From: Haliotis rufescens | Taxonomy: Eukaryota | Assembly: GCF_023055435.1 (NCBI RefSeq) | Contig: NW_025963935.1 | Span: 7,626,001-7,690,000 of the forward strand | Length of the DNA stretch: 64,000 nucleotides | Direction of reading: 5' to 3' | Shown here: positions 23,101 through 57,436 of the stretch, piece after piece | Layout of the letters: every line of letters starts with the position of its first letter | How positions within the stretch are numbered: the first letter of the stretch is position 1 | Notes under the pieces: generated by a model | Told to the model about the DNA's origin: nothing | Databases searched by the model: none | Seen by the model: the letters and a program-made list of their open reading frames with translations, nothing else | Position numbers and translations under genes: made by a program

Positions 23101-26100
23101 CCATCTTGGTTAAACCCGTCAGCAAAGTGACAAGGAAATTATGTTATCAGTGTGCTCCACGTCCAGTTACATAAAGATGCCAGATGCCCTGGTTCCCTAT
23201 GGTGGCTCCAGCTTGTGCATGGCTAAGGATCCAGTGTCGTCACAGAAGCTGCCATTGTCCCCTTAGGCATTGTCCTCCTGGAATATGTTGTGGTCCTTAC
23301 ACTAAAACTAGCCTTGGTACGGGTCACATTTGGGTGGTAGTACACCTATAGGTGTGTTCTTTGGTTCAAATCTGGCGATATCGAGGGTCATACGAGGATA
23401 TTTTCAGTTTAGTTCTGTATAAAGGCTGTTGTTTCACATGCGGTAAGTAGCCTGGCAGTGTCGTGTTGACAGATAGCATAGTTCATAGTGGGGAATATGT
23501 TCGGTTGTTGGATACCGTGGGCCACGAACATATGCCTCGCCACAAGTATGTGTGTAAGATGTGACACGAGTGGACATTTTGCTTTGGACAGTAAAATCGG
23601 AGGGAAGAGAGGCGAGTGAAAGCTCTGAGAAAAGGGAAAAGATTGAAAGAATAATACTTAACCCATTACAAGGATAGATAGATATGATGTTAATAAATCA
23701 TTGGTTTAATCATCACGCAGGTAATTTTTCTGCCACAAATCCTGACGTTGAGATAGCATGTATGTAGAGATTGCGATAAGGCATCCAGGCAAGTAGTAGG
23801 AATCCCCTCCTTGATGATAATTATTTTTGTATGTATACTAGTGAAAACATCTCTCGGATTGGCAAAATCAAAACTTAAAATACTCTGTCGTTGTTGATTT
23901 CTATCGGTTTTTCTGCACGAAATGTATTGCCACACATCCTTTGAATTTTGCAGTAACCGTAACTTTTCATTTTGTAACCTACATGGGTAGATATAATTAT
24001 TTAAATACGCCTACCGACAATGATTAAAAATGTTGTATTCTATGAATATTAGCTTCCGCGGTGATGCGGTCGTCAAATCAGCTGTTTTAATCAGAGGGGG
24101 TTTATTGTGATTTAATAGCCTCTGACTGACCAATCAGAATCGAGTAATTCCCAAATGCATGGTTGGAAACGAAGGCTGTAGTATGGAGGTTGCTTGGCCC
24201 ACCACTTTTCGATTCTGTTGCATGTAGTCTCTCCTGTAACATATGAATTGTTGCTTTGGATACTATAGAGACGTCTAGCAATGACGTCTTATCTCACGGT
24301 GAGCATACATACACAACCCTTACCATTGGGTGCAGTCTATTCTGGAAATTTTGAAAAACGGATTTTCTCAAGACGATTCAAAGGTCAAACCTACTAAAAG
24401 TCTTTTATACATGTGTTGTCTACATGATGCTGTGATCGTGGGCCTGAATGGCGGGCAAATGTAAGTGCTGTGTGGGGTTGTTTTCACTCGACCTGATGAC
24501 CACCCAATAATTAGAACTGTGTTTTATCATTGACGATTCTGCAACACTGTGAAGTAAAGGAATATAGGTGAAGTTCTTTTACTATAAACTTGTGTAATCT
24601 ACAGAAAGGGAACTCTTAATTCTAGTATCCTAGTGGTGAATCAAGGTTGGAATAGTCACTAACAACAATTATGCATGTTTGTCGTAACAGGCGACAGAAT
24701 GGAAAGTCACAATAACGTATGGTAATGATATGATCGGAATCTCACAAAACAGTTATCATGTATCAACGACATTGGTCTTTTACTGAAGCATTTTCGATAT
24801 AGCGCATATATTCAGGAGGTTAATCAGTGGCCTTTGTTCACTATTTTATAAAAAAAAAACTAATTTGTGCAGAAATTAAGTAATTCTACCCGAATTAAGA
24901 AATTAATTGTTCGGGTGACTGTTGAATTAAGCAAAGACATTGTCAACAACTAATACATTATGAAAAAAAAAAATTAATGCAAAATTCTTTCTGATATTTC
25001 TGATATATATTAAAAGCGATAAGATAATGTCCTTAATCTTATATCTTCACTGAAAGAGGAGTTCACAAATATTCTCCAGTAGAACTAGAATATATAGTTT
25101 TTATTGGCCGAGTTTATTTATCTATTTGGCTATTTTGATTGTGCAGCTTACAATAGCAGCATGGTGGTTACAAGTGTGTTCAATCAATATTCCGGCAACA
25201 CGTGCAATACAACTGTTCTGAGCTGAAATATTATCAGGTTTTTGTCAACGAAATACATTTCACATGCTATCGCACACAGTGAAGCGACTGTAAAATGAGT
25301 ATTTCAGAGAATCCAGTATCATTTCCGAATAATATATCGTCTTGCAGGTGAACCCCCTGAGTGTTACAAAACAAGAGTCAACACCTTCTTGACTGCTCTC
25401 CAAAGCTTCTCCGATGCAGTACAGACTGTCAAGGCCGACGCTCCACAAGACTCTCCGGATCGTAGGTCTTTTACAATCACCAACAAGTATTTTCTTTATT
25501 GCAATATCATTATATATCCAGAAACGATAAATTCACTGACCTACTGCTGATGTGGCTTGAACCTTGCTCTACAGACATCTAAGATAAGGTGGCAGATTCA
25601 GCGGGTTTCAATCAGGCCATTAAACGCTACTTGAGAAATGTGTTATTATTCATCTAAACTAAGTCAACAATAACTGATTATTGTTATTACAAAGAGGCAG
25701 TTTTACACAGCGAAGGTTCTAGTGCAGAGAACTTGTGCAGCTATAAGTAAAAGGAGGACACGTGTTTTAAATTTGGATAGTTCATGTTCATGACGTAACA
25801 ACCCTGACATCAGAAAGTACATAGAAATATGTAATCTTTAACTTGTAGTGTTTTGGTCTATCCTTTCTGGACGTTGTGCGTGGTGCGTGAGCTGATTGCC
25901 TTACATGACTAGAAAAGATACCACATACCCGGAATCTGTGTAACATAGTCAAGATGCATGTAGACATATCAGCAAATAAATACCAACTCATGAGATAATG
26001 TGGCTCACCCGGTTATGGTCTTACAGTCGTTACTTAAATCAAGTTTCAAAATGGTATGCCAGCGCAAACAAAACCATGTCTTGTTGACTTTAAGTTGCTG

Positions 26101-27375
26101 CTGTACTTGAAGGTACCGGTGCGGTGTTTGTGGCGTCGTGTGATGGAACTGATGTTGTCGTCGTGGATCCCAATGGCTTCATCCAAAATTGCATCACTAC
26201 AACTGAAAATGTCGATGGATGGACATTGCCTGGCCCCCCCGACGCGATGTCCGACTATGCATCATCTTACTACGAAAACGCTGGTTTTGATTAGAGTCGT
26301 ATGTAAAGCCATGCCATCCGGAATGGATACAACCTTAATAACAGCGCCTGGTACGTTTGTGAGCATTATGTATTTTTGTTCAAAATAACTTATCAATTTG
26401 TATGTTGAGAAAGTACCCCTGTTTGGACATGCAAAGCATCCCTTGTTCAAAATCACTTATGTTGCGAGTGGAGAGTTTGGGATGACAATCATTCAATGTC
26501 CCAGAAAAGGAACCGATGTGATTTTAGAATTGATGACTTTGTGGGAACTTTGTAGATACACATAAACAAAAACATACGAGAATGTATTGTCCTGTGATAC
26601 AGCAGATGCTCACCACGGAGATGACGACTTAGGTAAAGAATTGCGGAGTTATGCCCCTTTTTGTCATGTTTTGACGTCATAGCGTAAAATTTGTTTTCAC
26701 AACATAAAACAAGTACGTTTTCATGACGAATGTGTCACGTTTTACAAAATCGGACAATTGTAATATATCTGTCATGATGTTGTTCGGATATATGACAGTA
26801 TTTTGTTCATTCACAGTTTACATAAAGCTGTCAAATAAACTGTACTTTTTCTATGTACGATCTAATAAGGCTACATATTTTAGAGGCTTTTTCGTTAGCA
26901 AAACAGAAACTTGGACAACATTTAACACTTTTTGCTTTTAAAACCAGTCTTTAATTGTCCATCATGGGGGTAAAAATTCAATAATATACAAGTCCGTTGT
27001 CAGACTTTGGTCCAGCGCGACCGCAATTCTCGGGCAGCGTTGATTTTTCGAAACTATATGCGTCTGAACATTAACTCGGCAACCAGGATTCCAGCAATAA
27101 TTTAATTAATCACAAGCTTTTTGTCAGATATCTCGCGAGACCCGTGTTGTATGCAACTCGCCGCAGTGTGAAAGCCGACTTGTATACAATTTCAGTTCGT
27201 GCAACTAATTGCATACAACAAGTTGTATACAACTACCCCTTTAGGAGATTAAATAACTGTAATATCGTATTACATTATACACTTCTGTTTCTGAAAGTAA
27301 TTGGAAAGACACTGCTTTGATCCTGCCATATTCTTATAACTACCCTATTACACTTTTACATGTGATCTATACAAG

Positions 27376-27607
27376 TAAGTGAGTGAGTGGGTGGGTGAGT
27401 AGGATTTAATGCCACTTTTAACAGTATTCCAGTTATATCACGGTGTGTCAGCTTAATTTGGGAGGAAAGCCCGAAGAGGTGCAGGTCTCAGATGTTTATA
27501 GGTGCGTACCGGATTCGAACCCACAATCATAGGTTTCTAGTGCCCAAGGGACGCAACTCTGCACAGCGAATCGCGGCGACTTAGATGACTGGGCCACCCG
27601 TGCCCCC
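27376..27607 (-). mobile_element. SINE family 2, internally deleted; same insertion as 36910-37195
   Basis: same ctatacaag TSD in both arms. Confidence 0.9.
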
Positions 27608-27875
27608 TTCTATACAAGCAAACGGTCCATTGTTTGATACCTTTATTGAAACTTTTATTCTTTATCAGCCCAAGTCTTAATTTGTCATTGATTTGTTGTC
27701 AGGGACAGCACAAAGCATTACTGGCGTTGCCTTCAATCCTGCCAACGGAGGCTTCCTTTATCTAGCCCTTACCCAGACTTTTCGTCAGAATGGTATCTAT
27801 TCCTTAAACAGAGCAGGCATCGCCACCACACTTGTCTTCTCATATGATGGCGATACTGGCAACATTTATATTTGT

Positions 27876-28240
27876 AATATTCCAGCTGTAAGAAGGCGGT
27901 CTGTAAGTAATCGAGTCTGGACCGGGCAATCCAGTGATTGACATCATGAGCAGCGATCCACGCAATTGAGATACGATGATATGCATCAACCACGTCAGAG
28001 AGTCTGACCGCTAGATCCCGTTAATCGCCATTAACGACAGGCATTGTCGCCACGATCATGATATCACATTGCACAGGTCATTAAAAGAAGACAGATCGGA
28101 GGTTTGTTTGTTTGTTGTTTAACACCGCACTCAGCAATATTCCAGCTTTATGACGGCGGTCTGTAATTAATCGAGTCTGGACCAGACAATCCAGTGATTG
28201 ACATCATGAGCATCGATCCACGCAAATCGGATCGATGACG
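27876..28240 (-). mobile_element. two 5'-truncated V-SINE-like fragments (27876-28050, 28102-28240)
   Basis: reverse complement of gtcgt..ggcgactaacggga...gctggaatattgctgagtgcgg..(caaa)n; mirrored at 36212-36580. Confidence 0.75.
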
Positions 28241-28849
28241 TGAGGAAGAGCTGACAGGTTTTTTTACATTTACATTTATGTTGTGAGAATAGTTTATGGC
28301 TCTGTGTTCTTATTGCGTATTTAATATTTAACACCCTTAAGTAATGCGAGTGGTAGAGAATGGGTCATGTTAACAACTGAACAATATCTGATACAATAGT
28401 GCTGCAGCTACGTGTACATGAGTGACGACCAGAAGATCATCAGAAGACCGCTCGGCAGCACAGGCGACTGGGAGCAAGTCTTGAAGTATTCACTGACTCC
28501 TCTGGAGTTCGTGGTTCTCGAAGATGGTAGGTGCAATACAATTAATCAAATTATAATTCTGGGTTGGCATGTGAATACATTTTTTCCTTTGCGTATGTCC
28601 ACATGGAGACCATTTCGTGTGGACAACATGGGTGCCCGTGTTACAGGGATATGCAATTTTACATAGGTCTGTGAAATTACACGGACATGTAAATAATGCA
28701 TGGTCACAGGAGTCAGAGCGACACGCCCGACAAGGAGGGTGGTGTAACCAGCATATTGCTGCTCAAACTTGACCCTAGTAACCAATACATGGTCACAGGA
28801 GACAGAGCGACACGCGCGACAAGGAGGGTGGTGTAACAACTCAACTAGG

Positions 28850-29461: not shown

Positions 29462-29532
29462 TGAAGTGAAATGGGGTTAAACGTCGCGTCCAAGGTTATT
29501 GCACTTTTACAGCGACAGGCATGCACGCGCGC

Positions 29533-29607
<75 letters not shown>

Positions 29608-29820
29608 TGGCTGCTTGTAGTAGTCCTGACTGATGCTGATTTATAGTGATAGCTCACTGAGATACCATACCGCAATGTAACATGAATACCCCACTCAGAC
29701 ACACAGTATACTGACCCTGAGCCGACCAGTCCTTGTCGTAGCCCTTTAATGTCGAGCGCAAGAAAGGGTAACAACAAGTACCATCTTTTAACGTCTTTTG
29801 GCGCTCTACCACTAGACCAC
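29462..29820 (-). mobile_element. Meta-SINE-like element containing a compound (CA)n/(GCAC)n microsatellite (29521-29605)
   Basis: minus strand: tggtctagtggtagagcg A box, core aaagatggtacttgttgttaccc...cattaaagggc..aggactggtcggctcagggtcag...cagtgagctatcactataaa; family name from recall. Confidence 0.7.
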
Positions 29821-30185: not shown

Positions 30186-33100
30186 TTATGCACAGCTGCA
30201 ACATGACAATATACATCAGAATTACAATTTAACATTTAACGGATGAGGCGGTATCTAAACGTTATCTCCTCTAAACATATCTGACACATCTTGGTGAATA
30301 AAATGAATTATTCTGTTTTGATTGATAACCCTTATTCGAAAATTCTTTAGTGGATATATTAGAAGAATATTAGGATTGAACTATTTTCAGTCACAACTCA
30401 ATCATATCAAATCAAATCTTCAAGCTGTTTTGAAGAGCAATATAAGTAACAAGAAACAGTATAAAGTCTATTGATCTGTGTTCTATTACTGGTTAATTAC
30501 TTGGTCGTTGTTCTTGCTGGATGTGTAACAGTAACTAATACATTGTAAAAATTCATACCACAATGTTGGATCACAAGCAATAGACGGGCATGCAGAGGGA
30601 GTCGACGTGGTGTATGTCAATGAACTAACGAATTCAAGTGATGTAGCATTGTAGATCTCGATATCCCTGAAAGAAGAAACCTCCATTTAGTCACCTTCAT
30701 TGAAGAAACCGGTGAGAGCAGGGCAACACATCGACTGTACAAATGAAACTGGTTTATAAATTAATGGAAAATATGCTACATAACTATGCTTGTCGTAAGA
30801 GGCGACTTGACTTGGTTGATGCATGCCATCTTATCCCAATTGCGTAGATCAATGCTTATGATGTAAATCACTGAATTGTCTGGTCCAGACTTGATAATTT
30901 ACAGACCAACGTCATACAGCTGGAATATGGCTTAGTGCGGCGTGACACAACAAACAAACAAAACCATTCAACAAACAAACTGAATTCATGCACCCTGATA
31001 ACTTAAATAAGTCCGACCAAGAGATGCCTTTTTCGCGGCTTCTCTCTCATGCCTAATCTAAAATCTACTTATACTGACATGATGAGATTCCTTCTGAGTA
31101 TCTACAGAAGCTAAGTAGAGCATGTAGAGGTCTCTCACCCACTTTAACTACAAGTATATCATGTGGTGGTCCCTCACCCACTTTAACTACAAGTATATCA
31201 CGTGGTGGTCCCTCACCCAGTTTAACTACAAGTATATCATGTGGTGGTCCCTCACCTTCTTTAACTACAAGTATATCATGTGGAAGTCCCTCACCTCCTT
31301 TAACTACAAGTATATCATGTGGTGGTCCCTCACCCACTTTAACTACAAGTATATCATGTGGAAGTCCCTCACCTCCTTTAACTACAAGTATATCATGTGG
31401 TGGTCCCTCACCCACTTTAACTACAAGTACATCATGTGGTGGTCCCTTCCCCCTTTAACTACAAGTATATCACGTGGTGGTCCCTCACTGCCTTTAACTA
31501 CAAGTATATCATGTGATGGTCACTAACCCATTTAACTACAGGTATATCACGTGGTGGTCCCTTCCCCTTTAATTACAAGAATATCATGTGGTGGTCCCAT
31601 CCCCCTTTAACTACAAGTATATGATGTTGTGATCCCTTTCCCTTTAACTACAAGTATATCAAGTGGCGGCCCCTCATCCCCTTTAACTACAACTATATCA
31701 TGTAGTGATCCCTTTCCCTTTAACTACCAGTATATCAAGTGGCGGCCCCTCATCCCCTTTAACTACAAGTATATGATGTGGTGGTCCCTCATCCCCTTTA
31801 ACAACAAGTATATCATGTGGTGGTCCCTTCCCCCTTTAACTACAAGTATATCATGTGGTGATCCCTCACCCCCTTTAACTAGAAGTATATCCTGTGGTGA
31901 TCCCTTCCCCTTTATCTACAAGTATATCAAGTGGCGGCCCCTCATCCCCTTTAACTACAAGTTTATCATGTGGTGATCCCTTCCCCTTTACCTACAAGTA
32001 TATCATGTGGTGATCCCTCATCCCCTTGAACTACAAGTATATCAAGTGGCGGCCACTCACCCCCTTTAACTACAAGTATATCATGTGATGGTCCCTTCCC
32101 TTTTAACTACATGTATATCATGTGGTGATCCCTTCCCCTTTAACTACAAGTATATCAAGTGGCGGCCCCTCATCCCCTTTAACTACAAGTATATCATGTG
32201 GCGGCCCCTCATCCCCTTTAACTTCAAGTATATGATGTGGTGGTCTCTCATCCCCTTTAACTACAAGTAGATCATGTGGTGATCCCTTCCCTTTTAACTA
32301 CAAGTATATCATGTGGTGATCCCTTCCCCTTTAACTACAAGTATATCAAGTGGCGGCCCCTCATCCCCATTATCTACAAGTATATTATGTGGTGGTCCCA
32401 TCCCTTCAACTACAAGCATATCAAGTGGCGGCCCCTCGTCCTCTTTAACTACAAGTATATGATGTGGTGGTCCCTCACCTTCTTTAACTACAAGTATATC
32501 ATGTGGTGGTCCCTCACCTTATTTAACTACAAGTATATCATGTGTTGATCCCTCATCCCCTTTAACTACAAGTACATCATTCGGAAGTCCCTCACCTTCT
32601 TTAACTACAAGTATATCATGTGGTGGTCCCTCACCTTCTTTAACTACAAGTATATCATGTGTTGATCCCTCATCCCCCTTAACTACAAGTATATCATGTG
32701 GTGATCCCTTCCCCTTTAACTACAAGTACACCATGTGGTGATCCCATCCCCTTTAACTACAAGAATATGATGTGGTGGTCCCTCATCCCCTTTAACTACA
32801 AGTAGATCATGTGGTGATCCTTTCCCCTTTAACTACAAGTAGATCATGTGGTGATCCCTTCCATTTTAACTACATGTATATCATGTGGTGATCCCTTCCC
32901 CTTTAACTACAAGTATATCAAGTGGCGGCCCCTCATCCCCTTTAACTACAAGTATATGATGTGGTGATCCCTCACCCCCTTTAACTACAAGTATATGATG
33001 TGGTGGTCCCTCACCCCCTTTAACTACAAGTATATCATGTGTTGGCCCCTCACCTCCTTTAACTACAAGTATATCATGTGTTGATCCCTCAGCCCCTTTA

Positions 33101-36100
33101 ACTACAAGTATATCATGTGTTGGCCCCTCACCTCCTTTAACTACAAGTATATCATGTGTTGGCCCCTCAGCCCCTTTAACTACAAGTATATCATGTGGAA
33201 GTCCCTCACCTTCTTTAACTACAAGTATATCATGTGGTGGTCCCTCACCTTCTTTAACTACAAGTATATCATGTGTTGATCCCTCATCCCCTTTAACTAC
33301 AAGTACATCATGTGGAAGTCCCTCACCTTCTTTAACTACAAGTATATCATGTGGTGGTCCCTCACCTTCTTTAACTACAAGTATATCATGTGTTGATCCC
33401 TCATCCCCCTTAACTACAAGTATATCATGTGGTGATCCCTTCCCCTTTAACTACAAGTACACCATGTGGTGATCCCATCCCCTTTAACTACAAGAATATG
33501 ATGTGGTGGTCCCTCATCCCCTTTAACTACAAGTATATCATGTGGTCATCCCTTCCCCTTTTACTACAAGTATATCATGTGGTGATCCCTTCCCCTTTAA
33601 CTACAAGTATATCATGTGTTGACCCCTCATTCCATTTAACTACAGGTATATCACGTGGTGATCCCTTTCCCTTTAACTACAAGTAGATCATGTGTTGGTC
33701 CCTTACACCCTTTCACTACAAGTATATCATGTGGTGGTCCCTCATCCCCTTTAACTACAAGTATATCATGTGGTGGTCCCTTCCCCTTTAACTACAAGTA
33801 TATCATGTCGTGATCCCTTTCCCTTTAACTACAAGTATATCATGTGTTGGCCCCTCATCCCATTTAACTACAGGTATATCACGTGGTGGTCCCTTCCCCT
33901 TTAACAACATGAATATCATGTGGTGATCCCTTCCCCTTTAACTACAAGTATATCACGTGGTGGTCCCTCAAGTATAACATGTCGATGCAAGGCCACATGT
34001 TCAGACTGTAAACACAATTCAGTTCTATTACAATAAACTCACTAAGAACGCACCTTCACTTAGTTTATACTTATTTTATGAAAGACGCAAACTCTCACCT
34101 TACACCTCACTCTTACCTGGCCATCAAGCAACCTGATATGAGAAGGGGTCGGCACAAGGGGCACAGACATAAAATTCCCCACAAGACTGACATTGGTTCA
34201 ACACTTACATATGAATTACCAACAAAAGCAAATCTTATGAATAATAAAGATGCCAATTTTGTATTTGTTCTTGTTTTAAAGAAAGAAAGTTCAGTGTGTA
34301 TATATTCAAAACGTATAACGTCTGTTTTACTCACGCATCGTTTTTGTTTGCGATGTAGATCAGGTCATCATCACAGGGGCTGACTTTAATTGAACCACAG
34401 CAGTCACCATCGGTAGGCTCTTTCAGCTGTCTGTATGTTTTGTCAGTAGGATCATATATCAACACGGCACCGGATGTTTCACAGAACACAATTCTTCCTG
34501 TATAAGAAAGTGAGTGAGTGAAATGGGTTTAACACCGCTTTAAACAGTATTCCAGGCATATCACGACGTGTCGACTTGATGTTAGGAGAAAACCCAAAGT
34601 GATGTAGGTCTTAGACGTTTACCACTTTGGTAAAACCAACGAGCACGGGTATGGTGCTGACAAGCATCATCAATTGAAACATAATCGGGGTGAACCGGGA
34701 TTCGAACCCACGATCATTGGTTTCTGGCATGCCCAAAGGACGCAACTCTGCACAGCAAATAGCGTCACCTTAGACGACTGGGCCATCCGTGCACCCAAGT
34801 GTGAGAAGAGGCATTGTCATGAAATAGTAGAACTCAAGCAGTCAGTATTCCTCGCCGATTTGTATCAGAGAAATGTAGATTAAATGTATGATCTTTTAGG
34901 TAATGATTCACAGCAAAACGCTTTTCTACTTGTATCAGATACATATATAATACCGGAAAAAAAGTATCTATGCCTAATAAAAAGTACATAAAACGTAAAT
35001 AATAAAAAATACATTTATTCTGAATTCGAAACATGCATCTTTCAAATCATATTCATGAAGACATCCCATCAACTTTAATGTCCTGACTTACAAAATGTAC
35101 GTCCATGTTCACGCTGTTAATTTGGATGTTTGCGTGTTTGATGGCAGAATTATACTCATGACTGTGGCTTTACAACCGTTAATATGATTACGCAGTGCTC
35201 AACGTCTACGCACAGTGGGAATGTTGTAAGCAGGAATGGCGCAAAACAGAGATGCCAGACATTTAATGTTTATTAAAACACAACTTCAACTCTTTGGAGA
35301 CGCTATCTACAGCAGGGCAAGGCTCATCACTAGCCACCGTCCAATCGACGTTGTCGGGCGTGTCGCTCTGTCTCCTGTGACCATGAATGGGTTACCAGGG
35401 CCAAGTATGAGCAGTTATATGCTGGTTACACCTACCTCCTTGTCGGACGTGTCGCTCTGCCTCCTGTGACCATGTATGGGTTTCCAGGGTCAAGTTTCAG
35501 CAGCAATATGCTGGTTACACCACCCTCCTTGTCGGGCGTGTCACTCTGTCTCCTGTGACCATGTATGGGTTACTAGGGTCAAGTTTGAGCAGTAATATGC
35601 TGGTTACACCACCCTCCTTGTCGGGCGTGTCACTCTGTCTCCTGTGACCATGTATGGGTTACTAGGGTCAAGTTTGAGCAGTAATATGCTGGTTACACCA
35701 CCCTCCTTGTCGGGCGTGTCGCTCTGACTCCTGTGACCATGCATTATTTACATGTCCGTGTAATTTCACAGACCTATGTAAAATTGCATATCCCTGTAAC
35801 ACGGGCACCCATGTTGTCCACACGAAATGGTCTCCATGTGGACATACGCAAAGGAAAAAATGTATTCACATGCCAACCCAGAATTATAATTTGATTAATT
35901 GTATTGCACCTACCATCTTCGAGAACCACGAACTCCAGAGGAGGCAGTGAATACTTCAAGACTTGCTCCCAGTCGCCTGTGCTGCCGAGCGGTCTTCTGA
36001 TGATCTTCTGGTCGTCACTCATGTACACGTAGCTGCAGCAATATTGTATCAGATATTGTTCAGTCGTTAACCTGGCCCATTCTCTACCAGTCGCATTACA

Positions 36101-39100
36101 TAAGGGTGTTAAAAATTAAATACGCAATAAGAACACAGAGCCATAAACTATTCTCACAACATAAATGTAAATATAAAAAAAACCCGACAACTCCCTATCA
36201 GCTCTTCCTTACGTCATCGATCCCATTTGCGTGGATCGATGCTCATGACTCGATTAATTACAGACCGCCGTTATATAGCTGGAATATTGCTGAGTGCGGT
36301 GTTAAACAACAAACAAACAAACATACAATCTGTCTTCTTTTAATGACCTGTGCAATGTGATATCATGATTCTGGTGACAATGCCTGTCGTTAGTGGCGAC
36401 TAACGGGATCTGGCGGTCAGACTCGCTGACTAGGTTGATGCATATCATCGTATCCTAATTGCGTGGATCGATGCTCATGATGTCAATCACTGGATTGTCT
36501 GGTCCAGACTCCACTATTTTCTGACCGCCTTCATACAGCTGGAATATGAGTGCAGCGTGTACAACAAACAAACAAAACCAAAGCAATCATGCACAACACG
36601 TCCTTGTCAGCCCTTGAAGTAAGTCTGTGTACATACTCGCCACAAATATTAATGTTGCCAGTGTCGCCATCATAGGAGAAGAGAAGTTCGGCGGCGATGA
36701 CTCCTCTCGAGAAGGTATAGATACCATTCGGAGCAAAATTCGTGGTAATGGCTACATAAACGAAGCCTCCGTTGGCAGGATTGAAGGCAATGCCAGTTAT
36801 GCTTAGTACTGTCCCTGACAACAAATCAATGACAAATTAAGGCTTGGGCTGATAAAGAATAAAAGTGTCAATAAAGGTGTCAAACAATGGAACGTTTGCT
36901 TGTATAGGAGGGGGCATGGGTGGCCCAGTCGTCTAAGGCGCCGTGATTCGCTGTGTAGAGCTGCGTCCCTTGGGCACGCCAGAAACCTATGATTGTGGGT
37001 TCGAATCCGGTACGCCCCGATTATGTTTTTAGGTTTGCCAGCACCATTCCGGTGCTCGTGGGTTTCACCGAAGTGGTAAACGTGAGACCTGCATCACTTC
37101 GGGCTTTCCTCCCAAATTAAGCTGACACACCGTGATATAACTGGAATACTGTTAAAAGTGGCGTTAAATCCTACTCACCCACCCACTCACTCACACTTGT
37201 ATAGATCACATGTAAAAGTGTAATAGGGTAGTTATAAGAATATGGCAGGATCAAAGCAGTATCTTTCCAATTACCTGTCAGAAACAGAAGTGTATAATGT
37301 GATACGATATTACAGTTATTTTATCTCCTAAAGGGGTAGTTGTATACAACTTGTTGTATGCAATTAGTTGCACGAACTGAAATTGTATACAAGTCGGCTT
37401 TCACACGGCGGCGAGTTGCATACAACACGGGTCTCGCGAGATATCTGACAAAAAGCTTGTGATTAACTACATTATTGCTGGAATCCTGGTTGCCGAGTTA
37501 ATGTTCAGATGCATATAGTTTCGAAAAATCAACGCTGCGCGAGAATTGCGGTCGCGCGGTACTGGACCAACCTCTGACTTTGCAATTTAACGGACTTGTA
37601 TATTATTGAATTTTTACCCCCTTGATAGACAATTAAAGACTGGTTTGAAAAGCAAAAAGTGTTAAATGTTGTCCAAGTTGTTTTGCTAACGAAAAAGCCT
37701 CTAAAATATGCAGCCTTATTAGATCGTACATAGATAAAGTACAGTTTATTTGACAGCTTTATGTAAACTGTGAATGAACAAAATACTGTCATATATCCGA
37801 ACAACATCATGACAGATATATTAGAATTGTACGATTATTTATAACGTGACACATTCGTCACGAAAACGTACTTGTTTTATGTGGTGAAAACAAATTTTCC
37901 GCTTTGACGTCAAAACACGAGGGCGATGTCTACATGTACAAAGACAAAAAGGGCACAACTCAGCAATTCTTATCCTAAGTCATTGTAACTCAGCACCCGT
38001 CATGATTGTCCTCCCAAACTCTCCACTCACAACATTAGTAATTTGGACAGGGATTCATTGCGTGTCCAAACATGGGTATTTTCTCAACATACAAATTGAT
38101 AAGTTATTTTGAACAAAAATGCATAATGCTAACAAACGTACTATCCTCTCCTCCTAGGGGTGTATCCACTCCGGATGGCATGGCTTTACATACGACTGAA
38201 ACAACACTAGCGTTTGTGTAGTAAGATAATGCATAGTCAGACATCGCGTTGGGGGGGCCAGACAATGTCCATCCTTCTACATTTTCAGTTGTAGTGATGC
38301 CATTTTGGATGAAGCCATTAGGATCCACGACGACAACATCAGTTCCATCACACGACGCCACAAACACCGCACCGGTACCTTCAAGTATATAGCAGCAACT
38401 TAAAGTCAACAAGACATGGTTTTGTTTGCGCTGGCATACCATTTTGAAACTTGATTTAAGTAACGACTGTAAGACCATACCCGAGTCAGCCACATTATCT
38501 CATGAGTTGATATTTATTTGCTGATATGTCTACATGCATTTTGACTATGTTACACAGATTCCGGGTATCCTGGTATCTTTTCTAGTCGTGTAAGGCAATC
38601 AGCTCACGCACAATGCACAACGTCCAGAAAAGATACCCCAAAACACTACATGTTAAAGATTACATATTTCTATATACTTTGTAATGTCATGATTGTTACG
38701 TCATGAACATGAACTTGAATTGCAATGGGCATGTGATGGAAAGTTTAACTATCCAAATTTAAAACACGTGTCACCCTTTTACTTATAGCTGCACAAGTTT
38801 TCTGCACTAGAACTGTCGCTGTGTAACACTGCCTCTTTGTAATAACAGTAATCAGTTATTGTTAACTTGGTTTAGATGAATGACAAATTTCTCAAGTAGC
38901 GTTTTAATGGTCTGATTGAAACCCGCTCAATCTGCCCCCTTATCTTAGATGTCTGTAGAGCAAGGTTCAAGCCACATCAGCAGTAGGTCAGTGAATCTAT
39001 CGTTTCTGGATATATAATGATATTGCAATAAAGAAAATACTTGTTGGTGATTGTAAAAGACCTACGATCCGGACACTCTTGTGGAGCGTCGGCCTTGACA

Positions 39101-39657
39101 GTCTGTACTGCATCGGAGAAGTTTTGGAGAGCAGTCAAGAAGGCGTTGACTCTTGTTTCGTAACACTCAGGGGGTTCACCTGCAAGACGATAGATTATTC
39201 GGAAATGATACTGGATTCTCTAAAATACTCAATCATAACATAATTTACATACGCTTCACTGTGTGCGAAAGCATGTGAAATGTATTTCGTTGATAAACAC
39301 CTGAGAATATTTCAGCTCAGAACAGTTGTATTGCACGTGTTGCCGGAATAGTGATTGAACACACTTGTAACCACCATGCAGCCACTGTAAACTACACAAT
39401 CAAAATAGCCAAATAGATACATAAACTCAGGTCGAGTGAAAACAACCCCACACAGCACTTATATTTGCCCGCCATTCAGGCCCACGATCACAGCATCATG
39501 TGGACAACACATGTATAAAAAACTTTTAGTAGGTTTGACCTTTGAATCTTCTTGAGAAAATCCGTTTTTCAAAATTTCAGTTCCAGAATAGACTGCACCC
39601 AACGTAAAACAACAGTGATGGTTGTTTATGTATGCTCACCGTGAGATAAGACGTCAT
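30186..39657 (-). CDS. gene A: ~333-aa putative secreted beta-propeller-like protein. Coding exons 39657-39640, 39391-39337, 39179-39066, 38378-38142, 36814-36637, 36032-35914, 34497-34335, 30666-30559, 30195-30186
   Basis: all introns GT-AG with matching phases (0,1,1,1,2,1,2,2) and no internal stop: MTSYLTFTVAAWWLQVCSITIPATREPPECYETRVNAFLTALQNFSDAVQTVKADAPQECPDRTGAVFVASCDG...ITGIAFNPANGGFVYVA...YVYMSDDQKIIRR...RIVFCETSGAVLIYDP...IKVSPCDDDLIYIANKNDADIEIYN...CPSIACDPTLCCA*. Exon 2 donor (AC|gtgcaa) is weak, so the N-terminus is tentative. Confidence 0.85.
30787..30980 (+). mobile_element. V-SINE-like fragment
   Basis: tgcttgtcgtaagaggcgact core, gctggaatatgg..agtgcggcg, (caaa)n tail. Confidence 0.8.
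31130..33970 (+). repeat. 37/39-bp minisatellite (ccctcatcccctttaactacaagtatatcatgtggtggt), ~75 units, inside intron 7 of gene A
   Basis: direct periodicity with two length variants. Confidence 0.97.
34509..34796 (-). mobile_element. SINE family 2, full length, in intron 6 of gene A
   Basis: reverse complement of gggtgcacggatggcccagtcgtctaagg...ggttcgaatcccgg...(ctca)n. Confidence 0.92.
35351..35740 (+). repeat. 89-bp tandem repeat, ~4.4 units (only ~1.6 units in the left arm at 28700-28848)
   Basis: ttgtcgg(g/a)cgtgtc recurs at 35351, 35440, 35529, 35618, 35707. Confidence 0.95.
36212..36580 (+). mobile_element. two V-SINE-like fragments (36212-36325, 36380-36580)
   Basis: gtcgttagtggcgactaacgggatc core and (caaa)n tails. 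Confidence 0.78.
36910..37195 (+). mobile_element. SINE family 2 with cttgtatag TSD
   Basis: A and B boxes, tail and TSD visible. Confidence 0.92.
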
Positions 39658-41146
39658 TGCTAGACGTCTCTATAGTATCGAAAGCAACAATTCATATGTT
39701 ACAGGAGAGACTACAAGCAACAGAATCGAAAAGTGGTGGGCCAAGCAACCTCCATACTACAGCCTTCGTATCCAACCATGCATTTGGGAATAACTCGATT
39801 CTGATTGGTCAGTCAGAGGCTATTAAATCACAATAAATCCCCTCTGATTTAAACAGCTGATTTGACGGCCGCACCACCGCGGAAGCTAATATTCATAGAA
39901 TACAACATTTTTAATCATTGTCGGTAGGCGTATTTCAATAATTATATCTACCCATGTAGGTTACAAAATGAAAAGTTACGGTTACTGCAAAATTCAAAGG
40001 ATGTGTGGCAATACATTTCGTGCATGATAGAAATCAACAATGACAGTGTATTTTAAGTTTTGGGGACAACAGAGGGCTTGGAATTTTGCACTTTTCTATA
40101 TACGACTGTAACGTCATATCTTTTGCGTCACAATGAGCGATATGGCGTCATAACGGTGACGTTCGGTGTAGAACGATAGCTTTGCAAAGCATACCAGAAG
40201 ATGAAGTTACCAAGGGGGTTAACTTCATAGCAAAAATTATCATGTTTTGATTTTGCCAATCCGAGAGATGTTTTCACTAGTACACATACAAAAATAATTA
40301 TCATCAAGGAGGGGATTCCTACTACTTGCCTCGATGCCTTATCGCAATCTCTACATACATGCTATCTCAACGTCAGGATTTGTGGCAGAAAAATTACCTG
40401 CATGATGATTAAACCAATGATTTAATAACATCATACCTATCTATCCTTGTAATGGGTTAAGTATTATTCTTTCAATTTTTTCCCTTGACCTTTCTCAGAC
40501 CTTTCACTCGCCTCTCTTCCCTCCGATTTTACTGTCCCAAGCAAAATGTCCACTCGTGTCACATCTTACACACATACTTGTGGCGAGGCAAATGTTCGTG
40601 GCCCACGGTATCCAACAACTGAAGATATTCCCCACTATGAACTATGCTATCTGTCAACACGACACCCCAGGCCACTTACCTCATGTGAAACAACAGCCTT
40701 TATACAGAACTACACTGAAAATATCCTCGTATGACCCTCGATATCGCCCCACCTATAGGTGTACTACAACCCAAATGTGACCCGTGTCACAGACAGGAAC
40801 TGATGCTCACGTTGCATTCTAGTAAAAACGGCGACCCACAGAAGAGATTTGAAAGTAGTGTATTCATCTCGGCACCAAGAAACCAGTTGGAATGTTGGCT
40901 GTAGGCTAAAAGGCGAGTTTGCCTTAAAGACGAACAGATGCTCACGTTACGTGAGAGGAAGAAGGGCAACCGCTACGCTAGAACAGTTGTGGAGGTAGTG
41001 TGTATATCTCTGAACCATTGACACCATTTATAGTCTTTGCTGATGGTTCAAAGGCAATTTGGCCTAAAACAAGTACGTTTTGCATACAGAGTGACAGAAC
41101 GTCTTGTAGAACAGCCGTGATGGTAGTGTATTTCACTTTGGTCTTG

Positions 41147-44100
41147 GGTGGTGCATCAAGGGTGGTGCCCCAGAGGTGGTGCATCAAGGATGGTGCATCA
41201 AGGGTGGTGCTTCAAGGGTGGTGCCTCAAGGGTGGTCAATCAAGGGTGGTGCTTCAAGGGTGGTGCTTCATGGGTGGTGCATCAAGGGTGGTCCATCAAG
41301 GGTGGTGCATCAAGGGTGGTGCATCAAGGGTGGTGCATCAAAGATGGTGCATCAAGGGTGGTGCTTCGATGGTCGCCTCAAGGGTGGTGCTTCAAGGGTG
41401 GTGCTTCAAGGGTGGTGCATCAAGGGTGGTCCATCAAGGGTGGTGCATCAATGATGGTGCATCAAGGGTGGTGCTTCAAAGGTGGTGCTTCAAGGGTGGT
41501 GCTTCATGGGTGGTGCATCAAGGGTGGTCCATCAAGGATGGTGCATCAAGGGTGGTGCATCAAGGGTGGTGCATCAAGGATGGTGCATCAAGGGTGGTGC
41601 TTCAATGGTGGTGCCTCAAGGGTGGTGCTTCAAGGGTGGTCCATCAAGGGTGGTGCCTCAAGGGCGGTGCATCAAGGGTGGTGCATCAAGGGTGGTGCAT
41701 CAAAGGTGGTGCATCAAGGATGGTGCTTAAATGGTCGCCTCAAGGGTGGTGCATGAAGGGTGGTGCCTCAAGGGTGGTGAATCAAGGGTGGTGCTTCAAT
41801 GGTCGCCTCAAGGGTGGTGCATGAAGGGTGGTGCTTTATTTGTGGCGTCTCAAGGGTGGTGCATCAATGGTGGTGCCTCAAAGGTGGTGCATCAATGATG
41901 GTGCATCAAGGGTGGTGCATCAAGGGTGATGCTTTAATTGTGGTGCCTCAAGGGTGGTGCATCAATGGTGGTGTCTCAAAGGTGGTGCGTCAATGGTGGT
42001 GCATCAAAGGTGGTGCATCAAGGGTGGTGCATCAAGGATGGTGCTTCAATGGTGGTGCTTCAATGGTGGTGCCTCAAAGGTGGTGCCTCAAGGGCGGTGT
42101 TTCAAAGGAGGTGGATCCAGGGTCGTGCCTAAAAGGTGGTACATCAAGGGTGGTGCCTGAAAGGTGGTGCATCATTGGTGGTGCATCAAAGTCGGTGCAT
42201 CAAGGTTGGTGCATCAAGGGTGGTGCTTTAATTGCGGTGCCTCAAGGGTGGTGCATCAAGAGTGGTGCATTGAGGATGGTGCTTCAATGGTGGTACATCA
42301 ATGGTGGTGCATTAAGGGTGGTGCATCAAAGGTGGTGCATCAATTGTGGTGCCTTAAAGATGGTGCATCAATGGTGGTGCATCAAGGATGGTGCTTCATT
42401 GGTGCTGCTTCAAAGGTGGCGCCTCAAGGGCGATGCTTCATGGATGGTGCATCAAGGGTGGTGCTTCAATGGTGGTTCTTCAATGGTGGTACATCAATGG
42501 TGGTGCATTAAGGGTGGTGCATCAAAGGTGGTGCATCAATGGTGGTGCCTCAAAGATGGTGCATCAATGGTGGTGCATCAAGGATGGTGCTTCATTTGTG
42601 CTGCTTCAAAGGTGGTGCCTCAAGGGCGGTGCTTCAAGGGTGGTGCATCAAGGGTGGTGCTTCAACGGTGGTGCTTCAATGGTGGTGCCCCAAAGGTGGT
42701 GCCTCAAGGGTGGTGCTTCAATGGTGGTGCTTCAATGGTGGTGCTTTAATGGGGGTACCTCAAAGGCGGTGCCTTAATGGCGGTGCTTCAAGGGTGGTGC
42801 ATCAAGTGTGGTGCTTCAATGGTGGTGCTTCAAAGGTGGTGCTTCAAAGGTGGTGCCTCAAGGGCGGTGCATCAAGGGTGGTGCTTCAAGGATGGTGCAT
42901 CAAGGGTGGTGCTTCAATGGTGGTGCTTCAATGGTGTTGTCTAAAAGGTGGTGACTCAAGGGTGGTGCTTCAATGGTGGTGCATCAAGTTTGGTGCTTCA
43001 AAGGTGGTGCCTCAAGGGCGGTGTTTCAAAGGAGGTTGATCCAGGATCGTGCCTAAAAGGTGGTACATCAAGGGTGGTGCCTGAAAGGTGGTGCATCAAT
43101 GGTGGTGCATCAAAGTCGGTGCATCAAGGTTGGTGCATCAAGGGTGGTGCTTTAATTGCGGTGCCTCAAGGGTGGTGCATCAAGAGTGGTGCATTGAGGA
43201 TGGTGCTTCAATGGTGGTACATCAATGGTGGTGCATTAAGGGTGGTGCATCAAAGGTGGTGCATCAATTGTGGTGCCTTAAAGATGGTGCATCAATGGTG
43301 GTGCATCAAGGATGGTGCTTCATTGGTGCTGCTTCAAAGGTGGCGCCTCAAGGGCGTTGCTTCAAGGGTGGTGCATCAAGGGTGGTGCTTCAATGGTGGT
43401 TCTTCAATGGTGGTGCCTCAAAGGTGGTGCCTCAAGGGTCGTGCTTCCATGGTGGTGCTTCAATGGTGGTGCTTTAATGGGGGTACCTCAAGGGCGGTGC
43501 CTCAAGGGCGGTGCTTCAAGGGTGGTGCATCAAGGGTGGTGCTTCAATGGTGGTGCTTCAATGGTGGTGCTTCAAAGGTGGTGCCTCAAGGGCGGTGCAT
43601 CAAGGGTGGTGCTTCAATGGTAGTGTCTTTAAGGTGGTGCCTCAAGGGCGGTGCATCAAGGGTGGTGCTTCAATGGTTGTGCATCATTGATGGTGCTTCA
43701 ATGGTGGTGCTTCAATGGTGGTGCCTCAAAGGTGGTGCCTCAAGGGCGGTGTTTCAAAGGAGGTGGATCCAGGGTCGTGCCTAAAAGGTGGTACATCAAG
43801 GGTGGTGCATCAAGGATGGTGCTTCAATGGTGGTGCATCAAAGTCGGTGCATCAAAGGTTTTGCATCAAGGGTAGTGCTTTAATTGCGGTGCCTCAAGGG
43901 TGGTGCCTCAAGAGTGGTGCTTTAATTGTAGTGCCTCAAGGGTGGTGCATCAATGGTGGTGCCTCAAAGGTGGTACATCAATGGTGGTGCATCAAAGGTG
44001 GTGCATCAAGGGTGATGCATCAAGGATGGTGCTTCAATGGTGGAGCTTCAATGGTGGTGCCTCAAAGATGGTGCCTCAAGGGCGGTGTTTCAAAGGAGGT

Positions 44101-52430: not shown

Positions 52431-52641
52431 TCAGGCACGGACACTGTTCATCGATGATTTCAAGGGCACTATTAATGCCGTGGGAAATGTTGGCCAGTCT
52501 GTCACAGAGGGCTTGAAGCTTCTGGTTTACACGACCTGGTACTGGGCAATTTGATGAATTTCCAGAGAGTGTTCCGGCTGATGCTTGTTGGGCGAGGAAG
52601 GCCAGGAGGAGGCACGGGAAGTAGTTGGAGGAGAACATCAT
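52431..52641 (-). CDS. gene B exon 1: signal peptide plus Cys-bounded helical segment; probable distant paralog of gene A; downstream exons unresolved
   Basis: MMFSSNYFPCLLLAFLAQQASA|GTLSGNSSNCPVPGRVNQKLQALCDRLANISHGINSALEIIDEQCPCL, strong phase-1 donor A|gtaagt; shares C-x(4)-RVN-xx-L-x-AL...CP with gene A exon 3. Confidence 0.7.
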
Positions 52642-52660
52642 TGTGATTCTTCAAACAGCT

Positions 52661-52693
52661 ACTGACAATTATCAAAAACAGACCTCATTTATG
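52661..52693 (-). promoter_or_regulatory. candidate core promoter of gene B (CATAAAT at -30 plus TCAGT initiator)
   Basis: minus-strand cataaat (52693-52687) starts 30 nt upstream of the A of tcagt (52663), which is ~22 nt before the ATG. Confidence 0.5.
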
Positions 52694-53049
52694 CTGTATG
52701 AAACTGCCCTTGTGAAGTCACATGGTTGTACAGACACTCGTGGTTAGGTCCATCTGGTGTCAATTGATTTAGTGAAAGAGAAGTTGCTCGTATATTCCTA
52801 GTTTTAAGTAACAGCTCGTAATTTTGTGTCAATGAAAAAATCAGCCTCCATCTGTTTGAAACAAAAATATGTCTCGACCGCAATACGGCCATCTTATCAA
52901 TACAGAGAGACATGGCCCTGAGAGACAATATGCCTGTAACCCTTATTTATTAATAATCATTTCAAATCTTCAAATTTAAAAGGTCATAACAGGTGTTGAC
53001 TGTGATGGCAAATGGCCATTAAGCATCATATACCCTCATAACTGACGAG

Positions 53050-57415: not shown

Positions 57416-57436
57416 GGAGTACCCACAGGCGACTTC

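What the first reader, a model, noticed from the sequence alone, without database searches (positions are those of the whole stretch)
30186..39657. Hidden intact 9-exon gene: signal peptide, Cys-capped helical stalk and beta-propeller-like body
The ORF track shows only fragments, but nine exons splice in frame across SINEs and a 2.8-kb minisatellite into ~333 aa. Repeating beta-strand blocks (AVFVASCDG-TDVVVVDP; ITGIAFNP..GFVYVA..GIYTF; YVYMSD.QKIIRR; RIVFCE.SGAVLIYDP; IKVSP..DLIYIA...IEIYN) resemble NHL/YWTD/SMP-30-type propeller blades without a canonical YWTD signature. The N-terminal C...RVNAFLTALQNFSDAVQTVK...CP segment looks like an amphipathic oligomerisation helix, and the C-terminus is Cys-rich (CPSIACDPTLCCA). 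No transmembrane segment is seen. I do not recognise the family.
Basis: partly seen in the sequence, partly recalled or inferred. Interest (0 to 1): 0.8.

Follow-up and report, generated by a model that had tools for sequence, protein, structure and literature searches.

The report
Abalone secreted propeller gene, already annotated
The stretch holds most of a real, expressed red-abalone gene already in RefSeq as uncharacterized protein LOC124117298. It encodes a secreted six-bladed beta-propeller from an abalone-only family, and two of its blades are strikingly hypervariable between gene copies.

Summary
The true first exon (start codon, signal peptide, first helix) lies at 52641-52431, across a 13.25-kb intron that holds an 8.6-kb minisatellite.

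The true gene has 8 coding exons and encodes 379 aa, not 9 exons and about 333 aa. The exons match, residue for residue, Haliotis rufescens RefSeq XP_046335066.2, "uncharacterized protein LOC124117298".

AlphaFold2 gives a signal peptide, a two-helix hairpin bracketed by conserved cysteines, and a six-bladed beta-propeller. The nearest solved folds are YWTD/LDLR-type, TolB, Kelch and NHL propellers. There is no Pfam or PDB sequence match. Every relative found is from Haliotis.

The gene sits in a tandem cluster. Residues 163-246 (blades 2-3) are 49-63% identical between copies, against 86-98% elsewhere. Exon 4 has about five times the substitution density of its flanking introns.

I read it as an extracellular recognition protein with a variable binding surface. 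The ligand and tissue are unknown. The scan had already noted this same stretch in other windows.

The parts
52431..52641 (-). Coding exon 1: ATG at 52641, signal peptide (residues 1-22, ...QQASA|GT), first long helix, conserved CPC motif. The donor is A|GTAAGT, and the exon ends with 1 base of a codon.
   Evidence: tblastn of P0003/P0020 to the window; sequence read; residues 1-70 of RefSeq protein P0020. The exon 1-2 junction was not seen in reads here. It rests on the RefSeq model, on phase compatibility and on the same layout in the paralogs.
41146..49782 (.). 8.6-kb minisatellite (14 bp x 617, G-rich on the + strand) inside the 13,251-nt intron 1.
   Evidence: Tandem Repeats Finder; GC skew. 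The same repeat is present, at other lengths, in the paralogs' first introns.
39066..39179 (-). Exon 2: second long helix (EPPECYETRVNAFLTALQNFSDAVQTVKADAPQECPD).
   Evidence: Contig joint 38378|39066 in X1, X2 and X5; AG/GT sites; P0020 residues 72-108 at 100%.
38142..38378 (-). Exon 3: propeller blade 1 and the first part of blade 2. The hypervariable block starts at about 38217.
   Evidence: Joints 38378|39066 and 36814|38142; P0020; variability map.
36637..36814 (-). Exon 4: the rest of blade 2 and blade 3. It is the most variable exon: 67% of sites vary among 7 close copies, and substitution density is about 5 times that of the flanking introns.
   Evidence: Joints 36814|38142 and 36032|36637. 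Contigs with 0 mismatches over this copy-specific exon in X1 and X2 show that this copy itself is expressed. Divergence figures.
35914..36032 (-). Exon 5: blade 4.
   Evidence: Joints 36032|36637 and 34497|35914; P0020.
34335..34497 (-). Exon 6: blade 5 and part of blade 6.
   Evidence: Joint 34497|35914 in X1, X2 and X5. The loose end at 34334 continues into the start of exon 7.
31113..33970 (.). 2.86-kb minisatellite (39 bp x 74.6) in intron 6. It is open in several frames but is not part of the mRNA.
   Evidence: Tandem Repeats Finder; ORF lists.
30559..30666 (-). Exon 7: last blade and the CPSIACDPTL tail.
   Evidence: Loose end at 34334; P0020 residues 342-376 at 100%.
30186..30195 (-). 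Coding part of the last exon: 10 nt that complete ...CCA plus TAA. The 3' UTR continues below 30186 and was not mapped.
   Evidence: AG acceptor and phase. The C-terminal CCA of P0020 is conserved in paralogs of 43-55% identity. No read evidence was laid here.
22376..28837 (+). Partial inverted duplicate of 40914-35603. It holds copies of exons 2-5 only and has a frameshift in exon 3. It is a pseudogene fragment, tail-to-tail with the intact gene.
   Evidence: blastn of the two arms, 88-93% identity; tblastn split into two frames.

Best explanation
This is the red abalone (Haliotis rufescens) gene LOC124117298. It has 8 coding exons on the minus strand, from 52641 to 30186, and is transcribed and spliced.

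It encodes a 379-aa precursor. The parts are a cleavable signal peptide, a roughly 85-residue two-helix hairpin pinned by conserved cysteines, a six-bladed beta-propeller, and a short Cys-rich tail ending in CCA. The mature protein is about 38 kDa and acidic (pI 4.1). It has five N-glycosylation sequons, 17 cysteines and no membrane anchor.

It belongs to a family found so far only in Haliotis. The H. rufescens genome has at least 19 loci that match exon 3. Four full or nearly full copies and one fragment lie within about 160 kb around this gene.

Inferred mechanism: the propeller is an extracellular binding module. Blades 2-3 (residues 163-246) form a diversified specificity surface. The helical hairpin, together with the odd cysteine count or the C-terminal CC, may link subunits into multimers. 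On this reading it is a recognition protein in an evolutionary arms race, either mucosal or humoral immunity or gamete recognition.

Shown here: the gene structure, its expression, the predicted fold, the family's range in the databases searched, and the hypervariable block. Inferred: secretion, multimerisation, binding function and the selective cause.
For: Gene and expression:
- Spliced contig joints in three studies fall exactly at the AG/GT sites.
- There are zero-mismatch contigs over the copy-specific exon 4.
- The exons match RefSeq XP_046335066.2 at 100%, and that protein's source contig has the same length (10,626,372) as the window's contig.

Fold:
- AF2 on an 18-sequence family alignment gives mean pLDDT 75.5, with 80-92 in the propeller. 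It predicts 24 strands in six groups of four.
- Foldseek: TM about 0.7 to Kelch, TolB, LDLR and designed six-bladed propellers.
- VIA: Z 25.2-23.4 to ApoER2, nidogen, LRP4, LDLR and LRP6 YWTD propellers; 22.7 to TolB; 21 to Kelch; 20.9 to NHL.

Secretion: the N-terminal hydrophobic core and the ASA|G site. The highest 19-residue hydropathy elsewhere is 1.2.

Family range: an HMMER profile search of 1.84 billion representatives with exon 3 found 13 family members. A full-length profile word search found 16 relatives, all of them Haliotis proteins. Every family member whose source was looked up is from H. rufescens, cracherodii, asinina or rubra and is named 'uncharacterized'; two short fragments come from unnamed Logan assemblies.

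Diversification:
- The block at 163-246 is 49-63% identical between copies, against 86-98% for the rest.
- Exon 4 has 37/171-178 substitutions against 95-102/1931 in the flanking introns (p about 1e-11 to 1e-12).
- Nei-Gojobori dN/dS is 1.8-2.35 in exon 4.

Against an enzyme: the invariant columns are Cys, Gly, Pro, one Asp, Phe and Val. No catalytic or metal-binding constellation is conserved.
Against: - No ligand, tissue or oligomeric state is known.
- dN/dS above 1 in exon 4 is not significant on its own (one-sided p about 0.1-0.17).
- The synonymous rate in exons 3-4 (0.12) also exceeds the intron rate (0.047, p = 0.007). So part of the contrast reflects a mosaic history, such as gene conversion homogenising the rest or exchange of the block, rather than selection alone.
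- Variation covers whole blades, strands included, not only surface loops.
- The stalk is modelled with low confidence (pLDDT 47-72).
Confidence: 0.6

Rival explanations
1. It is a humoral or mucosal innate-immune pattern-recognition protein, lectin-like. The multimeric stalk presents propellers whose variable blades bind microbial surfaces. The tandem array supplies a repertoire.
For: Secreted and glycosylated architecture. Tandem cluster and at least 19 loci. Hypervariable block. Transcript contigs at high depth in many runs of three studies, which suggests a commonly sampled somatic tissue. By analogy, from general knowledge, to tachylectins, FREPs and olfactomedin-type clotting proteins.
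Against: No lectin or immune domain signature. No induction or binding data. Tissue unknown.
Confidence: 0.3
2. It is a reproductive protein of gamete, egg coat or gonad fluid. Its blades 2-3 co-evolve with a partner on the other gamete, as abalone lysin/sp18 and VERL do.
For: Rapid, localised divergence between paralogs and between H. rufescens and H. cracherodii: 87-90% identity even outside the block. Abalone fertilisation proteins are a classic case of duplication plus positive selection (PMC9022041 and PMC3567151, abstracts listed).
Against: It was not found in the abalone fertilisation literature by locus name or by motif. Its fold is unrelated to lysin/sp18 or ZP proteins. Many RNA runs from three studies hold it, which is less expected for a gonad-restricted gene, although the tissues are unknown.
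Confidence: 0.12
3. It is an acidic shell-matrix or other structural extracellular protein. The variable block is simply under relaxed constraint.
For: Mature pI 4.1, secreted, Cys-rich, lineage-restricted. Mollusc shell secretomes evolve fast and are full of lineage-specific proteins (PMC1676022 and PMC5400390, abstracts listed).
Against: The H. laevigata shell proteome paper does not mention any propeller, NHL, YWTD or olfactomedin protein. Relaxed constraint gives at most the neutral rate, yet exon 4 runs at about five times the intron rate. The rest of the protein is conserved.
Confidence: 0.1
4. It is an enzyme of the six-bladed propeller kind, such as an SGL/lactonase, strictosidine-synthase-like or phytase-like enzyme, with an active site in the central tunnel.
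For: Fold matches to lactonases, strictosidine synthase, Drp35 and phytase at Z 18-20. The nearest language-model clusters are NHL/SGL, at score 0.88, which is a lead only.
Against: No Pfam hit to SGL, Str_synth, Phytase-like or Lactonase even at E = 1. No conserved His/Glu/Asn/Asp metal-ligand set among 18 family members. The better fold matches are non-enzymatic YWTD propellers.
Confidence: 0.05
5. The exon-versus-intron contrast is produced mainly by gene conversion and not by positive selection. Conversion homogenises the introns and most exons between copies. An old, divergent block in exons 3-4 escapes it or is swapped in from distant copies.
For: Synonymous divergence in exons 3-4 (0.12) is 2.5 times the intron rate (p = 0.007). 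Introns and flanks are 95-97% identical between copies. Outside the block, same-species paralogs (92-98%) are closer than cross-species pairs (86-90%).
Against: Escape from conversion itself needs selection for diversity. Replacement changes outnumber silent ones about 5:1 in exon 4, with dN/dS about 2. No donor copy with a similar block was seen among the copies compared.
Confidence: 0.3

Closest known systems
RefSeq XP_046335066.2, uncharacterized protein LOC124117298 (Haliotis rufescens), and its paralogs LOC124117297 and LOC124117311
   Same: Identical to the window's exons over all 379 residues, on a contig of identical length. The paralogs, 84% identical, lie 64 and 111 kb away.
   Different: Nothing differs. 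This is the same gene. RefSeq gives no function, domain or family.
YWTD / LDL-receptor class B six-bladed propellers (ApoER2, nidogen, LRP4, LDLR, LRP6)
   Same: These are the best structural matches: Z 25.2-23.4, rmsd 2.6-3.1 A (4.2 A for the LDLR entry) over 245-263 residues. They are extracellular six-bladed, four-stranded propellers that serve as protein-binding platforms.
   Different: 10-16% identity. There is no Ldl_recept_b Pfam match and no YWTD motif. No EGF module follows; there is an N-terminal helical hairpin instead. Z values fall smoothly to TolB, Kelch and NHL, so no superfamily stands out.
NHL-repeat / SGL / TolB-type propellers
   Same: Blade-start motifs of the G-x-hydrophobic-VA...V-V-D-x-x-G kind. 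One NHL/teneurin-type protein (P0016) was a weak hit of the exon 3 profile. Fold Z is 20-23. These are the nearest language-model clusters.
   Different: No NHL, SGL or PD40 Pfam match at E up to 1. The atlas score of 0.88 is below the tool's trust level.
Olfactomedin-family proteins (myocilin, noelin, amassin)
   Same: The architecture works alike: signal peptide, then a Cys-bearing helical or coiled-coil N-terminal region that in olfactomedins makes disulfide-linked multimers, then a C-terminal propeller used for extracellular binding (general knowledge).
   Different: The OLF domain is five-bladed and has its own Pfam family. Here there are six blades, no OLF match, and no olfactomedin among the top 50 fold matches. 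It is an analogue, not a member.

Membership tests
Haliotis 'uncharacterized protein LOC124117298' family (unnamed) | Full-length collinear similarity: signal peptide, CPC motif, two helices, TGAVFVASC...VVDPNG blade start, CPS..DP tail. | tested here: met
   100% identity to P0020. Profile E-values of 1e-62 to 1e-166 to the 16 Haliotis proteins found.
LDL-receptor class B / YWTD propeller (Pfam PF00058) | Six repeats recognised by the Ldl_recept_b profile, with the YWTD motif. | tested here: not met
No Pfam family at E up to 1 for P0020 or seven relatives.
LDL-receptor class B / YWTD propeller (Pfam PF00058) | Six-bladed fold superposable on solved YWTD propellers. | tested here: met
   Z 25.2-23.4, rmsd 2.6-3.1 A (4.2 A for the LDLR entry 3p5b), 245-263 residues aligned. 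But Kelch, TolB and NHL follow closely.
LDL-receptor class B / YWTD propeller (Pfam PF00058) | A C-terminal EGF module packed against the propeller. | tested here: not met
   Only 11 residues follow the last strand, and there is no EGF Pfam match.
NHL repeat (Pfam PF01436) | Repeats recognised by the NHL profile. | tested here: not met
   No Pfam hit. There is only a weak exon-3-profile hit to one NHL protein (E 2.6e-4 over 22 residues) and atlas neighbours at 0.88.
Olfactomedin (Pfam PF02191) | A five-bladed OLF domain recognised by its profile. | tested here: not met
   No Pfam hit. The model has six blades (24 strands).
SGL / lactonase / strictosidine-synthase-like enzymes | Conserved metal-binding and catalytic residues in the central tunnel, and a profile match. 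| tested here: not met
   No profile match. The invariant columns of the 18-member alignment include no such set.
Secreted protein (classical pathway) | An N-terminal signal peptide with a small-x-small cleavage site, and no transmembrane segment or GPI tail. | tested here: inconclusive
   The hydrophobic core at residues 8-18 and the ASA|G site were seen by eye and by a hydropathy scale. No later window exceeds 1.22. No dedicated predictor was available.

The most novel reading that the evidence does not exclude
Abalone carry a lineage-specific repertoire of secreted six-bladed propellers. A two-blade cassette (blades 2-3, encoded by the end of exon 3 and by exon 4) is kept hypervariable, while gene conversion homogenises the rest of each roughly 20-kb gene copy, introns included. 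This would be a previously undescribed diversified recognition system of a mollusc, used in immunity or in gamete or species recognition. It would be comparable in logic to snail FREPs or sea-urchin Sp185/333, but built on a propeller.
Probability: 0.3. Interest if true: 0.7.

Novelty: new variant of a known kind. Interest (0 to 1): 0.42.

Why it matters
The gene itself is not a discovery, because RefSeq already models it. What is new is that it gets a description.

It belongs to an abalone-restricted family with no Pfam entry, no solved relative and no mention in the literature searched. The predicted architecture is clear: a helical hairpin followed by a six-bladed propeller.

It also shows an unusually sharp hypervariable block. 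Copies are about 50-60% identical there and about 90% identical elsewhere. Its main exon, exon 4, changes about five times faster than its own flanking introns.

Abalone are a classic system for rapidly evolving recognition proteins, and they suffer from withering syndrome, vibriosis and herpesvirus. A diversified secreted binding family would therefore be a concrete candidate for immune or reproductive specificity.

The case also shows that a long first intron filled with a minisatellite can mislead exon chaining from sequence alone.

Tried and rejected
- Pfam on single exons found nothing. Pfam on the full-length family members gave only chance hits at E above 0.1.
- A word-index protein search with exon 3 found nothing, because its length window excludes full-length relatives.
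- The ESM Atlas would not take the exon. Given the RefSeq protein, it returned only NHL/SGL neighbours below its trust level.
- A PDB sequence search with the family profile gave only chance hits at E about 1.
- My first splice choices were overturned by the contig joints and the RefSeq protein: exon 2 donor at 39062, exon 3 acceptor at 38398 and donor at 38190.
- A signal-peptide-like ORF at 40307-40128 (MMIIIFVCVLV...) was considered and dropped, because tblastn places the real exon 1 at 52641.
- Upstream conservation between paralogs could not locate exon 1. The whole flank is 97% identical.
- SINE identity of the intron repeats: no tRNA and no Rfam match. Only their high copy number is shown.
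- Literature searches by locus names, by short motifs, and by abalone plus propeller or proteome terms found nothing on this family.
- I made no joined exon sequence. Searches ran exon by exon, and from then on used the public RefSeq protein that the search returned. The divergence statistics sum counts per exon, not sequences.
Full report
**What is in the sequence**

I searched the model exon by exon and never joined the exons.

Pfam found nothing on any single exon. Exon 3 and exon 4, searched in the window's own genome (1.33 Gb, 615 contigs; the window is C157:7626001-7690000), showed a gene family. Five copies lie within about 160 kb on the same contig, one of them inside the window on the other strand. 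More distant copies lie on five other contigs. In total at least 19 loci match exon 3.

**Transcript evidence**

One look-up of public runs gave transcriptome-sized contig sets whose share of the stretch's words is about what the exons alone would give. I laid four of these runs on 34250-39700.

Runs X1, X2 and X5 (three studies, two organism labels) have contigs that skip exactly these intervals:
- 39065-38379 (intron 2)
- 38141-36815 (intron 3)
- 36636-36033 (intron 4)
- 35913-34498 (intron 5)

All four have minus-strand GT..AG ends. A loose end at 34334 reads into the start of exon 7. The large run X14 shows intron coverage and no such joints, so it looks like DNA.

Contigs of X1 and X2 cover the copy-specific exon 4 plus exon 5 without a single mismatch. 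So this copy itself is expressed, not only a paralog.

The joints corrected three boundaries. The exon 2 donor is at 39066, the exon 3 acceptor at 38378 and the exon 3 donor at 38142. The contigs also run 190-380 nt further 5' of exon 2, yet X1 and X2 have zero depth over 39346-39700.

**Finding the protein and the first exon**

The word-index search with exon 3 was blank, because its length window excludes full-length relatives. I then aligned exon 3 from ten loci of the genome and ran the one exhaustive HMMER search. It returned proteins of 360-410 aa in which the exon 3 region starts near residue 108. About 70 residues therefore had to lie upstream of exon 2.

The best full-length hit, P0003 (H. 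cracherodii), placed its first 71 residues at window 52641-52426 on the minus strand at 90% identity. That exon begins with ATG and ends at A|GTAAGT in the phase exon 2 needs.

A word search with P0003 then returned P0020. This is XP_046335066.2, "uncharacterized protein LOC124117298 [Haliotis rufescens]", 379 aa, from a contig of 10,626,372 bases, the same length as the window's contig. P0020 matches every exon of the window at 100% within the exon limits.

The gene therefore:
- has 8 coding exons;
- spans 52641-30186;
- has a 13,251-nt first intron that holds a 14-bp x 617 minisatellite;
- is already annotated.

An earlier scan note called 52200-52700 a separate 'gene B'. It is exon 1 of this gene. 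No other exons of a second gene lie between it and exon 2.

**The protein**

| Feature | Result |
|---|---|
| Signal peptide | Hydrophobic core at residues 8-18, ASA\|G cleavage site |
| Mature size and charge | 38 kDa, pI 4.1 |
| Cysteines and sequons | 17 Cys, 5 N-glycosylation sequons |
| Membrane segment | None; hydropathy stays below 1.22 |
| AF2 confidence | Mean pLDDT 75.5, pTM 0.68 (18-member family alignment) |
| Helices | 37-66 and 74-101 |
| Strands | 24 between 113 and 372, in six groups of four; pLDDT mostly 80-92 |

Conserved cysteines bracket the two helices: C32, the invariant C67-P-C69, C76 and C106. Others lie in the propeller: C118, C172, C292, C320, C328 and C367. The C-terminal CC is kept in many members.

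Foldseek matches six-bladed Kelch, TolB, LDLR and designed propellers at TM about 0.7 and 12% identity. The exhaustive structural search ranks the folds as follows:

| Fold | Z |
|---|---|
| YWTD propellers (ApoER2, nidogen, LRP4, LDLR, LRP6) | 25.2-23.4 (rmsd about 3 A, about 250 residues) |
| TolB | 22.7 |
| Kelch | 21 |
| NHL | 20.9 |
| Lactonases, strictosidine synthase | 18-20 |

This is a continuum without a clear break. Pfam and a PDB sequence search with the family profile are blank. The language-model atlas gives NHL/SGL neighbours at 0.88, below its own trust level.

So the fold is a six-bladed propeller of the YWTD/NHL/TolB kind, but membership of any named sequence family was tested and not met. 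No catalytic constellation is conserved.

**Range of the family**

Every relative of known source is from Haliotis: H. rufescens, H. cracherodii, H. asinina and H. rubra. This holds both for the 1.84-billion-representative HMMER search and for the full-length profile word search. All are named 'uncharacterized'.

Literature searches found nothing on this family. I searched by locus names, by short motifs, and by abalone plus propeller, proteome or shell terms.

**The cluster and the hypervariable block**

The neighbouring copies are segmental duplicates. Introns and flanks are 95-97% identical between them, and the first-intron minisatellite is shared.

Substitutions per aligned base, this gene against the two full neighbouring copies:

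| Region | Substitutions per base |
|---|---|
| Introns 2-5 and 7 | 0.03-0.054 |
| Exon 3 | 0.107 |
| Exon 4 | 0.21 |
| Each of exons 1, 2, 5, 6, 7 | 0.009-0.067 (pooled 0.029, below the introns) |

- Exon 4 against its flanking introns gives 37/171-178 versus 95-102/1931, an odds ratio of about 5 and p about 1e-11 to 1e-12.
- Among seven gap-free close copies (three H. rufescens, four H. cracherodii), residues 163-246 are 49-63% identical between lineages. The rest of the mature protein is 86-98% identical.
- That block is essentially blades 2 and 3, strands included.
- Nei-Gojobori dN/dS in exon 4 is 1.8-2.35, but not significant alone (p about 0.1-0.17).
- The silent rate in exons 3-4 (0.12) also exceeds the intron rate (0.047, p = 0.007).

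So the pattern needs more than simple positive selection on a recent duplicate. One possibility is that conversion homogenises everything except a block that selection keeps diverse. Another is that the block is exchanged with divergent donors. I could not separate these here.

**How it probably works**

- Shown: it is expressed and spliced, it has a signal-peptide-bearing N-terminus, a predicted helical hairpin and a six-bladed propeller, it is lineage-restricted and tandemly duplicated, and it has a two-blade hypervariable block.
- Inferred: it is secreted and glycosylated, and the propeller binds a partner through blades 2-3.
- Also inferred: the stalk, together with the odd cysteine or the C-terminal CC, links subunits. 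The architecture is analogous to olfactomedin-type proteins but not homologous. The partner would be something that changes fast, either microbes (my first choice) or gametes.
- An enzyme reading is unlikely.
- A shell-matrix reading fits the acidity, but not an exon that runs at five times the intron rate.

**Limits**

- The single read-laying run covered 34250-39700 only. The exon 1-2 and exon 7-8 junctions rest on the RefSeq model, phase and family conservation.
- No signal-peptide predictor and no multimer prediction were available.
- No model coordinates could be inspected, so the variable sites could not be placed on a face of the propeller.

**Verdict**

The structural reading is largely right. 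The gene is already annotated, though undescribed. The interesting part is the hypervariable two-blade cassette in an abalone-only secreted propeller family. The scan had already noted the inverted duplicate and the exon-versus-intron contrast on this same stretch. I tested both here and they hold, with the caveat about silent sites.

Noticed in passing
window 22376-28837 (+): Partial inverted duplicate of 40914-35603, 88-93% identical. It carries copies of exons 2-5 only and has a frameshift in its exon 3, so it is a pseudogene fragment lying tail-to-tail with the intact gene. Its exon 4 copy is only 67% identical in protein to the intact gene's exon 4.
   Followed up: partly
window 41146-49782: 8.6-kb minisatellite of a 14-bp unit (GGGTGGTGCTTCAA x 617) with strong GC skew, inside intron 1. 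The paralogs' first introns hold the same repeat at other lengths, so array length differs between copies.
   Followed up: partly
window 31113-33970: A 39-bp x 74.6 minisatellite that stays open in several frames on both strands (for example a 189-aa run of HDILVVKGGEGP-like units). It gives long spurious ORFs and is intronic in the mRNA.
   Followed up: partly
window 34432-34795, 36070-36615, 36798-37343: Very high-copy interspersed repeats in introns 3-5. Summed contig depth reaches 8.8 million in the DNA-like run, against about 100 for unique sequence. Two of them (about 34614-34883 and 36883-37100) are the same element in opposite orientation. There is no tRNA or Rfam match, so SINE identity is unproven.
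   Followed up: partly
window 35351-35741: An 89-bp x 4.4 tandem repeat (93% matches) in intron 5.
   Followed up: no
window 36032/36743 (run X1): A second, more abundant contig joins exon 5 (with 5-7 differences) to only the first 70 nt of exon 4 and then diverges. It is most likely a paralog or allele with a different exon 4 that is expressed together with this gene.
   Followed up: no
window 56010-57578 and 61124-64000: Further minisatellites upstream of the gene, with 30/59-bp, 54-bp x 20.6, 27-bp and 46/92-bp units. The 46-bp array switches orientation at about 62760, so it looks like an inverted pair of arrays.
   Followed up: no
window 29529-29609; 2711-2925; 12899-13099: A (GCGT)n microsatellite just beyond the 3' end of the gene, and two runs of N (assembly gaps or masked stretches), which I left untouched.
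   Followed up: no
G000:C157 7.50-7.67 Mb: The cluster has copies at about 7.506 Mb (+), 7.553 Mb (-, LOC124117297), 7.600 Mb (-, LOC124117311), 7.652 Mb (+, the fragment) and 7.664 Mb (-, this gene). For the 7.506-Mb copy, exon 1 and exon 7 were not found within the 20 kb fetched, so its completeness is open.
   Followed up: partly
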